From Ascoidea asiatica JCM 7603 (lineage: Eukaryota > Fungi > Ascomycota), in the NCBI GenBank assembly GCA_001600695.1, contig BCKQ01000017.1, positions 96,609-160,608 of the forward strand: a stretch of DNA of 64,000 nt, in the 5' to 3' direction. Shown here one piece after another: positions 36,031-39,883 of this stretch. The notes beneath the pieces were generated by a model. That model searched no databases. It worked only from the letters and a program-made list of their open reading frames with translations, and was not told the origin of the DNA. The position numbers and the translations under genes are program-made. Numbering within the stretch: the first letter of the stretch is position 1; every line of letters starts with the position of its first letter.

Positions 36031-37869
36031 TTAGAACTGATTATTTAAAAAATTGTTTAAAAAGCTATTCGAATTTAATGAATTCGCTTGATTGTCATCA
36101 AGATTTGAAAGATAAGTATTATCAGCTAATTGATTTGGATCATTTGATGATTGTAATAAAAAATTTGTAGAAAATGAATTTAGAAATATTTGAGGATTTT
36201 TGAAATTATTGAACATTGAAGAAAAATCGGTTAAACTTAAAGAATTATTTTGATTAAAAATATTAGAAAAATCATTTTGATTACAATAATCAATATTTTC
36301 AATCAAACTATTTTGTTCAAATTGATTTTTTGGAGAATTAGTAATATTATGGTAATTTATAATTTGGGGAATAAAATTTAAATTATTAACTAATAATGGT
36401 TGAAGTGTATCATTATAGAAACTAAATTCTAGTGGAAATTGAAAATTATTATAATTTTGGCAAAGTATATTTGAATTATCAATATTGAGTGAGTTCAGTT
36501 GTTCTTGAAGTTGAAAATTCTGAAAATTATTAATATTATCAATATTATCAATATGATTGGAATTTTGAATACTTTGAATTGTATCAATACTTTGGGTATT
36601 ATTATTATTATTATCAATATGCTGAATATTTTGAATATTTTGAAAAGTGTTCAGAGCTCTTTTTGAAATCAAGAATTCTTTTAAATCTTCATCTGAAATT
36701 TCATTTGAGCCTTCATCAAATTCCTCAATCAAAATTTCATTTAAATCTTCTTTGAATTCTTCTATAGGATAATTTATAGGATTAACTTTAGGATAATCTT
36801 TAGTGTCTTTATTTGAAGTTTCTATAAAATCATTCTCATTCAAGTTCTTGATTAAATATTTATCCAAATCTTCATTGGGACCAGGATCAAAGTTCCCAGA
36901 AATAATTAAATCTAAAAAGTTTTCATTTATTTCAGGACTGTTACTTATTATGCTTGTATTGCTTGAAGGTATTATATTATTTAATTTTTCAACTTCTTTA
37001 TCTTTTTTTGAATTTATAACATCTTCTTTTGATTTTAAACTAATTTTTTTGATGTTTTTTTCAATTTTGATAATATCTTTAGAATTAATTGTATTTGTAA
37101 GTTTAGAAGAACTTTTTTTTATAACTTTATTAATTTTAAAGACACTTTTATTTGATAATATTTTTCTATTATTACTTTTTTTTTTAGTTAAATTTTCTCT
37201 AATATCAATATCGGTAAATAAGGAAATTGGAGAAATTTCTTCTTTAATTTTATCCACTTTTTCAGTATATTTTTTACTTGTTAAAATTTCAATAATATAA
37301 GAATCAGATTGAATTAAAGGAAATAAAACAGGAATTGAGATTGAATATGATTTTGAAGTTGAAGTTGAATATTGATATTTGAAAAGTTTGAAAGAAATTT
37401 TAAAAATTCCTCTTCTATTAATACCAAGATGATTAAATTTAAATTGAATTGAATTATTTAATTTATTAAAATTTCCAATAACTAAATTTTTATCATAACC
37501 AACTAAAAAAAATTTTAAAAGAGTATGTTTTGAATTTTCAAAAGATTCAGTCAGTTCAATTTCTGGAATTATAAAAAAAGTTTCTAAAGAATTTTTAGTT
37601 ATATTAATATTATTACTAAATAATTTTAATTCAAGTAATGGCTTTGGAAATAAACATCTAATTTGAGAAGGAATTTTAATTTCAATATTTTTATTATTAT
37701 TAATAGTAGTATTACTATTACTAGTATGAGTAAAAGAATTATTTGATTTGATTGAATAAGATTCTCTACCAATTTTAGGTGGAATTAAAACTTTTAACTG
37801 ATAAGTGACATTTGAAATATTAATACATTCTACAGAATTTACAAATTTTAAAGAATTAGATGAACTCAT
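36031..37869 (-). CDS. Putative transcription factor with divergent N-terminal velvet-like domain and acidic/Asn-Gln tail
   Basis: YQLKVLIPPKIGR, RCLFPKPLLEL, FKFNHLGINRRGIFKISFKLF, SDSYIIEILTSKKY follow velvet motif order; basic region then low-complexity tail. Confidence 0.55.
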   Translation of the reverse strand: MSSSNSLKFVNSVECINISNVTYQLKVLIPPKIGRESYSIKSNNSFTHTSNSNTTINNNKNIEIKIPSQIRCLFPKPLLELKLFSNNINITKNSLETFFIIPEIELTESFENSKHTLLKFFLVGYDKNLVIGNFNKLNNSIQFKFNHLGINRRGIFKISFKLFKYQYSTSTSKSYSISIPVLFPLIQSDSYIIEILTSKKYTEKVDKIKEEISPISLFTDIDIRENLTKKKSNNRKILSNKSVFKINKVIKKSSSKLTNTINSKDIIKIEKNIKKISLKSKEDVINSKKDKEVEKLNNIIPSSNTSIISNSPEINENFLDLIISGNFDPGPNEDLDKYLIKNLNENDFIETSNKDTKDYPKVNPINYPIEEFKEDLNEILIEEFDEGSNEISDEDLKEFLISKRALNTFQNIQNIQHIDNNNNNTQSIDTIQSIQNSNHIDNIDNINNFQNFQLQEQLNSLNIDNSNILCQNYNNFQFPLEFSFYNDTLQPLLVNNLNFIPQIINYHNITNSPKNQFEQNSLIENIDYCNQNDFSNIFNQNNSLSLTDFSSMFNNFKNPQIFLNSFSTNFLLQSSNDPNQLADNTYLSNLDDNQANSLNSNSFLNNFLNNQF

Positions 37870-39377
37870 TTTGATTGATTCAATTTATATAGTTATTTTA
37901 AGAGCATAAGTTATAAAGTAAGATAATAAGTCAGTTAATAAGTCAGTATTTAAATCGTCATCGATCCAGTCAGCAATTAGACTAGTGATTGATGATAATC
38001 AATTGAACGTGTGAATATATGAATATATGAATATATATTTGTTTAAACATTTTTTTACAAGCATAAAGAACAAGGAAATTTGTATTAGTATTTATACAAA
38101 AATCTATTAAATAAAAATTTGATAATTTACCAAAACTGTGTCTGGAATAATAGTTTTAATGAAAAAAAAGATTATGGAAATGGAGATTGGAGAGAATAAT
38201 TTAAATTAAAAATGGACCTAGAATTAGTAAAGATAGATAAAATATTAATAATTATTGAAATTAGGTATTTGGTTGAAAAAAAAGACACAGTTAATTTAGG
38301 AAAAAAGCATACCTGAAATGAAAAATATATAGTAAAATCATTAGTCCTTCACTCATTACTATTCCAAATAGAATACATTAACGATTATATTCATTGGAAT
38401 ATATTAATTTCAATTGTAAGTAAAGCAGATACCCCAAATTTAAGCCCTAAAGTAACCTTTCTCAACCGAGATTTTTTCAAACACCCTTACCTAAAAAAAC
38501 AGAATCTAGCATGCACTTGCCGATACGGCCTTAAAAGCTTAGACTCAGCCGCGGGACACGAGCTCTAAAGAAGGGTCTGAGCTTCTGCAAATGCCGGAGC
38601 TGGGACCGGGGTAAAAAGATTTGGGACAGCGTAAAAGCCCTGTTATCAGGGCTGCACACTAGAGCCCTGGTTTATAAATTCACTGCTGTGGCCTGTGTAC
38701 CACCTTAGGAAGGTCCACCTGTACCCCGCACTCAAGGTCCCTGCCACCAAAAATATTCCTTTTCGGAGTCTCGGCAGACCTTCAGACAGGAGCTCGGCAC
38801 ACGATCCGCACCCACAGCAGTCACGGGGGCTGACTGGCCACTGCCACGCCCTGTGTGTATCTGCTTGCTGACGAGAGACCCAGCGCGCTGGCTCCTCTCT
38901 GCTGCTGCTTTTATGTTCTTATCTCGCTGCCGGCCGTTGTGTATCCGCTAGCAGAATGAAATCTGAATGAAATAAGCATTGAGATCTTTTCGTTACTCTT
39001 TAGCCAGACAGAGAGAGAGAGAGAGATTTAGGATCAGGATTTGCCAGTTTTCACTATGGATGACAATCAAATTCTTTTATATGTTCAAGTTTTAAAATAT
39101 TCCTCTAATTTTGAATATATTCAATTAATAGATACTGTTTTGCATTTATACTCAAAATATTTTCATTACTAATCTCACTTAATAAAATTGACTGATTAAA
39201 ATACTTGAATGGTCTTTGCAAGAAATCTTTTGTCTTTCAATTTCACTTTAAATACAATAGGTTTATTTTCCCTTTTTTTGCTTTCTATTGTTTTTTTTCT
39301 CCTTTCATACTTCTTCTTCATTCAATCTACTAATCATATAACAGTTTCTCCATCTCAATAGAAAGAGTAATATTTAT

Positions 39378-39438: not shown

Positions 39439-39883
39439 ATGTCTTTGAATAATATGAAATATCCAGCTTGCTCTCCTCCTTCATATATTCAATCCATTTC
39501 TTCAAATCAAAATATCAATAATTTACCATCATATTCTGAATTTAATGATATTTTACCAGATTATAAACCTTCAATAATTAATTATACTATAATTTATTTA
39601 AAAAATGAATTATCAAACCCTTTTAATAATGATTTATCTTCTTTAAATTCAAATAATTCAATCTCAAATTTACCTTGGAAACCATACCTTTTACAAATTA
39701 ATTCAACTCAATTAAATTTTTATTCTTTTAAAAATAAAAATTTAATATCTTTCTTTAATCATTTTTTTCTTTTATTAGATCAAAATATCATTTCAAATAA
39801 TAATAACAATAACAATAATAATAAATTTAATAGTAAATTCAAAAATAAATTAAATATAAAATTTAAAACTTTACCAAATACTA

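What the first reader, a model, noticed from the sequence alone, without database searches (positions are those of the whole stretch)
37260..37869. Divergent velvet-like domain in a budding yeast
Seen: YQLKVLIPPKIGR / RCLFPKPLLELKL / IQFKFNHLGINRRGIFKISFKLFKY / IQSDSYIIEILTSKKY. Known: the velvet consensus runs Y.L.v.QQP..aR / RpidPPPiiqL / FvF.DLSVR.eG.frL.F.Lf / S..F.VysaKkF. Velvet regulators (VeA, VelB, VosA; Rel-homology-like fold) control development and secondary metabolism in filamentous fungi and are absent from S. cerevisiae and C. albicans. Inference: this is a highly diverged velvet or related Ig-fold TF, followed by a basic NLS-like segment and an activation-like tail. The C-terminal PGM..ST.LS dimerisation helix is not evident, so its partners or mode of action may differ.
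Basis: partly seen in the sequence, partly recalled or inferred. Interest (0 to 1): 0.8.

Follow-up and report, generated by a model that had tools for sequence, protein, structure and literature searches.

The report
Cryptic, highly diverged velvet-domain regulator gene
The first ~210 residues of this 612-residue yeast protein are a real but very diverged velvet (NF-kB-like) domain, one long-branch member of a hidden expansion of about 30 velvet-type genes in an Ascoidea-like budding yeast.

Summary
ORF 36031-37869(-) encodes 612 aa, and the four quoted motifs are present.

- **Pfam:** Velvet alone scores below threshold (12 bits, E 0.21).
- **The genome:** it holds 10 canonical velvet genes plus at least 20 diverged velvet-like loci.
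- **Profile test:** a profile of 20 of these paralogues, built without the query, hits query aa 21-207 at E 5.9e-9. The best of 2000 shuffles scores 5.3 bits.
- **Link to canonical velvets:** the diverged set is tied to them by hhalign (P 6.5e-13). Against PDB sequences it matches only VeA, VosA and VelB.
- **Structure:** two AlphaFold models, one made without any canonical velvet in the alignment, have only VeA, VosA and VelB chains as significant Foldseek matches (E about 1e-8). VIA-align Z is 14-15, against 8-10 for Rel, NFAT, STAT and p53.
- **Differences from canonical velvets:** a 33-residue low-complexity insertion sits in DNA-binding loop A, three of its four basic positions have no counterpart, and the PG..ST.LS segment is absent.
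- **Rest of the protein:** a Lys-rich stretch, three EDLxxxLI repeats and an N/Q-rich tail.
- **Relatives and host:** no relative was detectable outside this genome. The host is an Ascoidea-like budding yeast, and velvets are already known in part of Saccharomycotina.

The scan's other readers had independently noted velvet-like genes elsewhere in this genome.

The parts
36031..37869 (-). Whole gene: intact ORF of 612 codons plus TAA stop (36031-33), 20.1% GC
   Evidence: Chance of no stop in 612 codons at this composition is about 4e-27.
37237..37821 (-). Diverged velvet domain, aa 17-211
   Evidence: The profile built without the query hits aa 21-207 at E 5.9e-9. hhalign of the query against the diverged paralogues gives P 6.9e-10. 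AF2 models have pLDDT 78.8 and 72.1. Foldseek top 7 are VeA, VosA and VelB chains. VIA Z is 14.2-15.2.
37765..37803 (-). First strand and start of loop A, YQLKVLIPPKIGR (aa 23-35). It corresponds to the canonical Y.L.v.QQP..aR block; QQP is replaced by IPP and the Arg is kept.
   Evidence: Alignments; coordinates checked.
37666..37764 (-). 33-residue N/S/T-rich insertion (aa 36-68) inside loop A, the loop that carries the VosA DNA-binding residues K37, K39, R41 and K42
   Evidence: Gap in all 23 other rows of alignment A2. pLDDT is 51-68 there. Loop A function is from PMC3876986.
37621..37662 (-). IRCLFPKPLLELKL (aa 70-83), equivalent of the canonical dRRpidPPPiv.L. R71 and P75 fall in nearly invariant columns. 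R71 is the only loop-A basic residue that stays in register (VosA K42).
37375..37449 (-). Best-conserved block, IQFKFNHLGINRRGIFKISFKLFKY (aa 141-165), equivalent of fF.F.DLSvR.eG.yrL.F.Lf. G154 falls in the one invariant column of A2.
   Evidence: The Pfam Velvet partial hit covers aa 137-182 against profile positions 150-195. Also.
37267..37314 (-). Last strand, IQSDSYIIEILTSKKY (aa 186-201), equivalent of S..F.VysaKkF
37234..37278 (-). Predicted alpha-helix directly after the last strand (aa 198-212). It takes the place of the canonical C-terminal helix but has no PG..ST.LS motif.
   Evidence: Helix at model residues 189-202/203 in both models; pLDDT is about 93 for 191-200 in model 1 and falls to 65-67 beyond residue 200. 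VIA alignments to VosA and VelB run to model residue 214.
36982..37257 (-). Lys-rich segment, aa 205-296 (KKKSNNRK at aa 229); a possible nuclear import signal or non-specific DNA contact
   Evidence: Composition only
36667..36873 (-). Acidic segment with three EDLxxxLI repeats (aa 333, 374, 394); a possible activation or protein-contact motif
Evidence: Regex and composition.
36034..36666 (-). N/Q-rich low-complexity tail, aa 402-612
   Evidence: Composition; no Pfam family

Best explanation
[quoted passage not shown] Its N-terminal ~195 residues fold as the velvet beta-sandwich; homology is shown by profiles and the fold is predicted. By analogy with VosA, VelB and VeA, it most likely acts in the nucleus as a homo- or heterodimer with other velvet proteins of the same cell and regulates transcription. 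The Lys-rich stretch would then provide nuclear import, and the EDLxxxLI repeats plus N/Q tail would provide activation or co-factor contacts. All of these functional steps are inferred, not shown. The DNA-contacting loop A is remodelled by a 33-residue insertion and keeps only one of four basic positions in register, and the canonical C-terminal segment is missing. Its DNA specificity or its reliance on a partner therefore probably differs from canonical velvets.
For: Pfam's only domain-level match is Velvet, though sub-threshold. The genome has 10 canonical velvets and at least 20 diverged velvet-like loci. A leave-query-out profile hits the query at E 5.9e-9 over aa 21-207, and the best of 2000 shuffles scores 5.3 bits. 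A profile of only the Pfam-detected members, chosen without reference to the query, hits at E 5.1e-5. hhalign gives P 6.9e-10 for the query against the diverged set, and P 6.5e-13 for the diverged set without the query against the canonical set. The diverged-set profile matches only VeA (1.2e-7), VosA (1e-4) and VelB (0.1) among 177,635 PDB sequences. Two AF2 models, with and without canonical velvets in the alignment, have VeA, VosA and VelB chains as their only Foldseek matches at E <= 0.001. VIA Z is 15.2, 14.3 and 14.2, against at most 10.1 for Rel proteins. In the ESM Atlas feature search, 26 of the 30 nearest clusters are velvet clusters. The ORF is intact.
Against: Pfam Velvet is not reached (12 bits against a cut-off of 25). 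The query alone against canonical velvets is weak (hhalign P 0.008 over 31 columns). The whole-genome scan with the leave-out profile did not list the locus, probably because its first look scored only 30 candidates. No orthologue was found anywhere, so conservation and purifying selection could not be assessed. No RNA data exist for expression. The loop-A basic patch is largely lost. The Atlas recognition value was low. Part of the diverged set used in the profiles was first picked up through similarity to the query, which introduces some circularity; the 'caninter' profile avoids it.
Confidence: 0.8

Rival explanations
1. It has the velvet fold but is no longer a DNA binder. It would act only by dimerising with canonical velvets, titrating or retargeting them, or as a scaffold through its tail.
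For: Loop A carries a 33-residue insertion. Only R71 aligns with one of the four VosA residues whose mutation abolishes DNA binding. The canonical C-terminal segment is absent. The branch is long at 2.3 changes per site.
Against: K65 and R35 remain near the loop, and a Lys-rich stretch follows the domain. VelB also has only one Lys in loop A, yet it is part of a DNA-binding heterodimer (PMC3876986). The dimer prediction gave no verdict.
Confidence: 0.25
2. It is a decaying or functionless paralogue: an ORF left over from the family expansion and drifting without selection.
For: It is a long-branch singleton with no detectable orthologue. The family contains broken copies at C20:210220 and C20:187262. 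There is no expression evidence.
Against: A 612-codon ORF without a stop at 20% GC has chance probability of about 4e-27. All nearly invariant core positions of the family are retained. The domain is predicted to fold confidently.
Confidence: 0.1
3. The match is a chance or compositional resemblance in an AT-rich, N/K/I-rich proteome, or the domain belongs to another Ig-like DNA-binding family (Rel, NFAT, p53/Ndt80-like, CSL) rather than velvet.
For: Pfam is sub-threshold. HMMER reports a high bias term of 22 bits. Rel, STAT and p53 folds also align at Z 8-10.
Against: Shuffles with the same composition reach at most 5.3 bits against 39.2 for the real sequence. Other N-rich ORFs of the window score no better than E 200. 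Velvet structures stand 4-5 Z units and about 5 orders of Foldseek E-value above all other folds. The PDB sequence search returns only velvets.
Confidence: 0.04

Closest known systems
Velvet family (Pfam PF11754): VeA, VelB, VelC and VosA of Aspergillus nidulans; structures 4N6Q, 4N6R, 9I2S
   Same: It shares the seven-stranded twisted beta-sandwich with a helix after the last strand (predicted). It has the motif blocks Y.L.v...P..gR, .R.l.P.p.l.L, L.G....G, .F.F..L.i...G.f.i.F.L and S..i.v.tskk(Y/F). The domain is N-terminal and followed by a long disordered tail, as in VosA and VeA.
   Different: The Pfam score is only 12 bits. QQP is replaced by IPP. There is a 33-residue insertion in loop A, and three of the four basic DNA-contact positions have no counterpart. 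The conserved PG..ST.LS..l..qG..i.iR segment is absent. Identity to solved velvets is 13-22% in the structural alignments.
Canonical velvet genes of the same genome (such as G000 C4:457814 and C4:487383) and Ascoidea rubescens velvet factor family proteins (ASCRUDRAFT_74701, ASCRUDRAFT_71456)
   Same: They are in the same genome or lineage, and have the same domain and the same habit of long N-rich insertions between strands.
   Different: The canonical genes score 79-222 bits on Pfam Velvet and form a well-supported clade (99/98) that excludes the query.
Diverged velvet-like genes of the same genome (cluster on contig C20 at 140-214 kb; also C6:912 kb, C4:1316 kb, C3:1384 and 1389 kb, C11, C5, C48)
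   Same: They are likewise truncated, lacking the PG..ST.LS segment, and have G-R-x-S in place of the aRmCG loop start. All are at or below the Pfam cut-off. The nearest row to the query in the tree is C6:912 kb.
   Different: Most keep a compact basic loop A (sKRRLkP) without an insertion and are short proteins of 170-400 aa. The query is a singleton on another contig with the longest tail. It is at most 31% identical to any of them.
Rel homology region, N-terminal domain (NF-kB p50/RelB, Dorsal/Gambif1, NFAT)
   Same: It has the same Ig-like DNA-binding sandwich architecture, with Z 8.9-10.1, as already described for VosA (PMC3876986).
   Different: There is no sequence-level relationship, no Rel-C dimerisation domain, and the structural match is clearly weaker than to velvets.

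Membership tests
Velvet (PF11754) | Score at or above Pfam's gathering cut-off (25 bits) | tested here: not met
   12 bits, E 0.21, covering only profile positions 150-195. The locus was not found in the whole-genome PF11754 scan.
Velvet (PF11754) | Significant profile-level homology to bona fide velvet proteins over most of the domain | tested here: met
   The leave-query-out profile of 20 paralogues gives E 5.9e-9 over aa 21-207. The hhalign chain links the query to the diverged set (P 6.9e-10) and the diverged set to the canonical set (P 6.5e-13). The diverged-set profile hits only VeA, VosA and VelB among PDB sequences.
Velvet (PF11754) | Velvet-type beta-sandwich fold, closest to VosA, VelB and VeA | tested here: met
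   This rests on predicted structures only. The Foldseek top 7 are velvet chains at E 1.9e-8 to 1.5e-5 in two models. VIA Z is 15.2, 14.3 and 14.2, with rmsd 2.7-4.0 A over 144-170 residues.
Velvet (PF11754) | Conserved core residues of the family (Arg and Pro of the RR..PPP block, L.G, F.F, G, F.L) | tested here: met
   The invariant column (G154) and all nearly invariant columns of the 24-row alignment (R71, P75, L122, G124, F143, F145, F160, L162) are occupied by the consensus residue in the query.
Velvet (PF11754) | Basic patch in loop A needed for DNA binding (VosA K37, K39, R41, K42) | tested here: inconclusive
   Only R71 aligns, with VosA K42. The K39-equivalent is Ile70. The loop holds a 33-residue insertion of low model confidence. 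K65 and R35 lie nearby.
Velvet (PF11754) | C-terminal conserved segment PG..ST.LS..l..qG..i.iR (loop B plus C-terminal helix) | tested here: not met
   The motif is absent from the query and from all the diverged paralogues in the alignment. A helix of unrelated sequence is predicted at aa 198-212.
Velvet (PF11754) | Homo- or heterodimerisation through the velvet domain | not testable with these tools
   One homodimer job gave 'no answer'. This is neither support nor evidence against.
Velvet (PF11754) | Sequence-specific DNA binding and control of development or metabolism | not testable with these tools
   It needs EMSA, ChIP and deletion experiments. No RNA-seq runs exist for this organism in the index.
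Rel homology domain (NF-kB, NFAT) | Rel-N plus Rel-C two-domain architecture and the Rel sequence signature | tested here: not met
   There is no Pfam RHD hit. The structural similarity is only Z 8.9-10.1 to Rel-N. No second Ig domain follows, since aa 212-612 are low-complexity.

The most novel reading that the evidence does not exclude
This gene and the other diverged copies (about 20 loci in all) would form a previously unrecognised, lineage-specific radiation of truncated velvet domains in Ascoidea-type yeasts. These domains lack the C-terminal segment and have remodelled DNA loops. They would have taken on new roles, either new DNA specificities or DNA-independent partner-swapping that modulates the 10 canonical velvets. 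That would give a budding yeast one of the largest velvet-type regulator repertoires known among fungi.
Probability: 0.25. Interest if true: 0.6.

Novelty: new variant of a known kind. Interest (0 to 1): 0.45.

Why it matters
Velvet regulators are the fungal counterparts of NF-kB and are usually discussed for filamentous fungi. Surveys based on Pfam report modal counts of 2-14 velvet genes per genome across fungal groups and find them missing from most budding yeasts (PMC10845976). Here a 20-Mb yeast genome carries about 30 velvet-type loci. About two thirds of them, including this one, fall at or below the Pfam cut-off, so such surveys would miss them. The gene shows how far the domain can drift while keeping its fold: a loop insertion, loss of the C-terminal segment and at most 22% identity to solved structures. 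It also offers a natural test of which parts of the velvet domain are needed for DNA binding and which for dimerisation. The practical result is a better annotation, and a family-specific profile could recover cryptic velvets in other AT-rich fungi.

Tried and rejected
- **Homologue searches outside the genome.** A word-indexed search with aa 1-215 found nothing. phmmer of aa 1-215 against 1.84 billion representatives found nothing at E <= 0.001. The diverged-family profile in the word-indexed search also found nothing. None of this genome's proteins is in the 15-billion collection by exact look-up. 'No relatives' therefore means none detectable, not none existing. The E-value scale of the big library would also hide hits below about 40 bits.
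- **Whole-genome scan with the leave-out profile.** It did not list the query locus. Exactly 30 candidates were scored and the same profile gives 34.9 bits locally, so I attribute this to the first-look prefilter. It remains a blemish.
- **phmmer with default filters.** It returned nothing within the C20 region because of the bias filter. --max was needed.
- **Single sequence against PDB sequences.** It gave only a meaningless E 0.13 hit to 4h0a.
- **Homodimer prediction.** No answer, score 0.01. It is not used as evidence either way.
- **Expression.** Only DNA runs hold the stretch.
- **GC island at 38470-38990.** No Rfam match even at E <= 1, and it is single-copy.
- **Pfam 'Tox-REase-2' (E 0.5) and DUF7690 (E 5.8)** on the full protein: dismissed as noise in the Lys-rich region.

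Full report
**What is there.** The finding lies at the 5' end of an intact minus-strand ORF, window 36031-37869, of 612 codons and 20.1% GC. At this composition a stop is expected about every 10 codons, so an open frame of 612 codons has a chance probability of about 4e-27.

**Direct family scans are weak.** Pfam gives Velvet (PF11754) as the only hit for aa 1-210. It scores 12 bits (E 0.21, cut-off 25) and covers only profile positions 150-195. A single-sequence search of PDB sequences gives nothing meaningful. A word-indexed search of 5.8 billion proteins found no relative, and neither did a full phmmer scan of 1.84 billion representatives. On its own the sequence is an orphan with a hint of velvet.

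**The genome supplies the missing links.**
- Scanning the window's own 20.3-Mb assembly with PF11754 finds 10 canonical velvet genes (79-222 bits) and several weak ones.
- Searching with the query domain finds a weak paralogue on contig C20.
- Reading that region shows a cluster of velvet-like ORFs with the pattern Y.L.F....GRpsG.sskRRLkP..II.L ... L.G....G.Y......F.F..LGI...G.Y.L.F.L.
- Profile scans of the genome bring the total to at least 20 diverged loci, two of them broken by stops. They lie on C20 (12 loci), C3 (2), C4, C5, C6, C11 and C48, plus the query on C17.
- Contig C3 at 574 kb also has a further short copy that groups with the canonical genes in the tree.
- These counts are lower bounds, because the genome tool scores only the best candidates.

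**Statistical test of membership.** I built a profile from 20 paralogues (8 canonical and 12 diverged or intermediate) without the query.
- It hits the query at E 5.9e-9 (34.9 bits, Z = 8000) over aa 21-207, spanning profile positions 5-158 of 177. No other ORF of the window does better than E 200.
- Against the isolated domain it scores 39.2 bits, and the best of 2000 composition-preserving shuffles scores 5.3 bits.
- A profile made only from genes that Pfam itself had picked, and so chosen independently of the query, still hits at E 5.1e-5.
- hhalign gives P 6.9e-10 for the query against the diverged set over 140 columns. It gives P 6.5e-13 for the diverged set without the query against the canonical set. 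The query alone against the canonical set gives only P 0.008.
- The diverged-only profile (A3) searched against all 177,635 distinct PDB sequences returns exactly three hits: VeA (1.2e-7), VosA (1e-4) and VelB (0.1).

One blemish remains. The whole-genome scan with the leave-out profile did not list the C17 locus. I attribute this to its prefilter, which scored exactly 30 candidates.

**Structure.**
- AlphaFold2 on aa 10-225 with a 24-row alignment gave mean pLDDT 78.8 and pTM 0.74.
- That alignment contained canonical velvets, which could steer the model. I therefore repeated the prediction with 15 rows from the diverged set only, which gave pLDDT 72.1 and pTM 0.69.
- In both cases the only Foldseek matches at E <= 0.001 are the seven velvet chains 9I2S A-D, 4N6R A/B and 4N6Q, at E 1.9e-8 to 1.5e-5. 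The next fold is at 2-3e-3.
- VIA-align gives Z 15.2 (VeA, 2.7 A over 144 residues), 14.3 (VelB) and 14.2 (VosA). Rel, NFAT, STAT and p53 domains follow at Z 8-10. This is the same ordering reported for VosA itself (PMC3876986).
- A language-model feature search of the single sequence puts 26 of the 30 nearest ESM-Atlas clusters in velvet clusters, though its recognition value is low.

**How it differs from canonical velvets.**
- *Loop A.* This loop lies between strands 1 and 2. In VosA it carries K37, K39, R41 and K42, whose substitution abolishes DNA binding (PMC3876986). In the query it holds a 33-residue N/S/T-rich insertion (aa 36-68) of low model confidence. Only R71 stays in register, with VosA K42, and the K39-equivalent is Ile70.
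- *C-terminal segment.* The conserved PG..ST.LS..l..qG..i.iR segment is absent, as it is in the rest of the diverged set. A helix is predicted at aa 198-212 in both models, with high confidence over its first ten or so residues in model 1.
- *QQP.* It is replaced by IPP.
- *Position in the family tree.* The query is a long-branch singleton (2.3 changes per site). It lies outside the well-supported canonical clade (99/98), and its nearest row is the C6 gene. Its exact placement is unresolved.

**Rest of the protein (composition only).** There is a Lys-rich stretch at aa 205-296, an acidic stretch with three EDLxxxLI repeats at aa 333, 374 and 394, and an N/Q-rich tail to aa 612. These are compatible with nuclear import and activation or co-factor contact, but that reading is inference.

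**Organism and what is already known.** A canonical velvet of the same genome is 55% identical to Ascoidea rubescens ASCRUDRAFT_74701. The next named yeast match is Saccharomycopsis crataegensis at 39%. The neighbouring genes are of fungal and yeast type: Anp1, a protein kinase, Nudix, PI-PLC-X, prefoldin and UBX. The host is therefore an Ascoidea-like member of Saccharomycotina, and 'budding yeast' is right. Velvets are not new to the subphylum, however. Part of Saccharomycotina retains them (PMC10845976), and Saccharomycopsis fibuligera was reported to have 12 (PMC5106798). What is new is the size of the repertoire once sub-threshold copies are counted (about 30 loci), and the truncated, loop-remodelled form to which this gene belongs.

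**Mechanism, with shown and inferred steps.**
- *Shown computationally:* homology to the velvet family, a predicted velvet fold, and an intact ORF.
- *Inferred from family knowledge:* nuclear regulator, dimerisation with other velvets, and DNA binding.
- Because loop A is remodelled, I give roughly even odds that the domain still binds DNA specifically by itself. The main rival is a partner-only modulator.
- A homodimer prediction returned no answer and is not used. No RNA data are available.

**Verdict.** This is a real, diverged velvet-domain gene: a new variant within a known family. It is of moderate interest on its own and of more interest as part of the cryptic family expansion. Other first-stage readers of this scan had already flagged velvet-like genes on other pieces of this genome.

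Noticed in passing
window 38470-38990: A single-copy island of 53% GC sits in a genome of about 20% GC, between the velvet-like gene and the 795-aa ORF at 39439. It has no tRNA and no Rfam match even at E <= 1, and it occurs nowhere else in the genome. It may be an unclassified structured RNA gene.
   Followed up: partly
G000 contig C20, about 140-214 kb (loci L012, L013, L019-L023): A cluster of 12 diverged velvet-like ORFs, interspersed with housekeeping genes such as spermidine synthase and a class II aldolase. Two copies are near-identical (200160 and 208744), and two are broken by stop codons (210220 with 3 TAA; 187262 with TGA and TAA).
   Followed up: partly
L006 (G000 C1:656573-658771) and L017 (C8:407345-408523): Canonical velvet domains are interrupted by very long N/D/K-rich low-complexity insertions between strands, about 500 aa in L006. 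This shows that the fold tolerates large loop insertions in this genome.
   Followed up: no
L005 (G000 C4:419639-420424): The Pfam Velvet match of this canonical copy starts 13 codons upstream of the first ATG of its open frame. That suggests a non-ATG start, a short intron or a mis-set start.
   Followed up: no
L025 (G000 C48:8387-8869): A velvet-like copy on a 17-kb contig contains ambiguous bases, read as X in translation. It was left out of the alignments.
   Followed up: no
window 36803-37300 (+): A 165-aa GTG-initiated ORF lies antisense to the velvet-like gene. It is hydrophobic and low-complexity and is most likely a by-product of the AT-rich coding strand.
   Followed up: no
window 37554-37552 (codon 106), and codons 406 and 458: The gene has three CTG codons. 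In the Ascoidea/Saccharomycopsis lineage CUG decoding is non-standard (my own knowledge), so these residues may not be Leu. Codon 106 lies in a loop of the domain.
   Followed up: no
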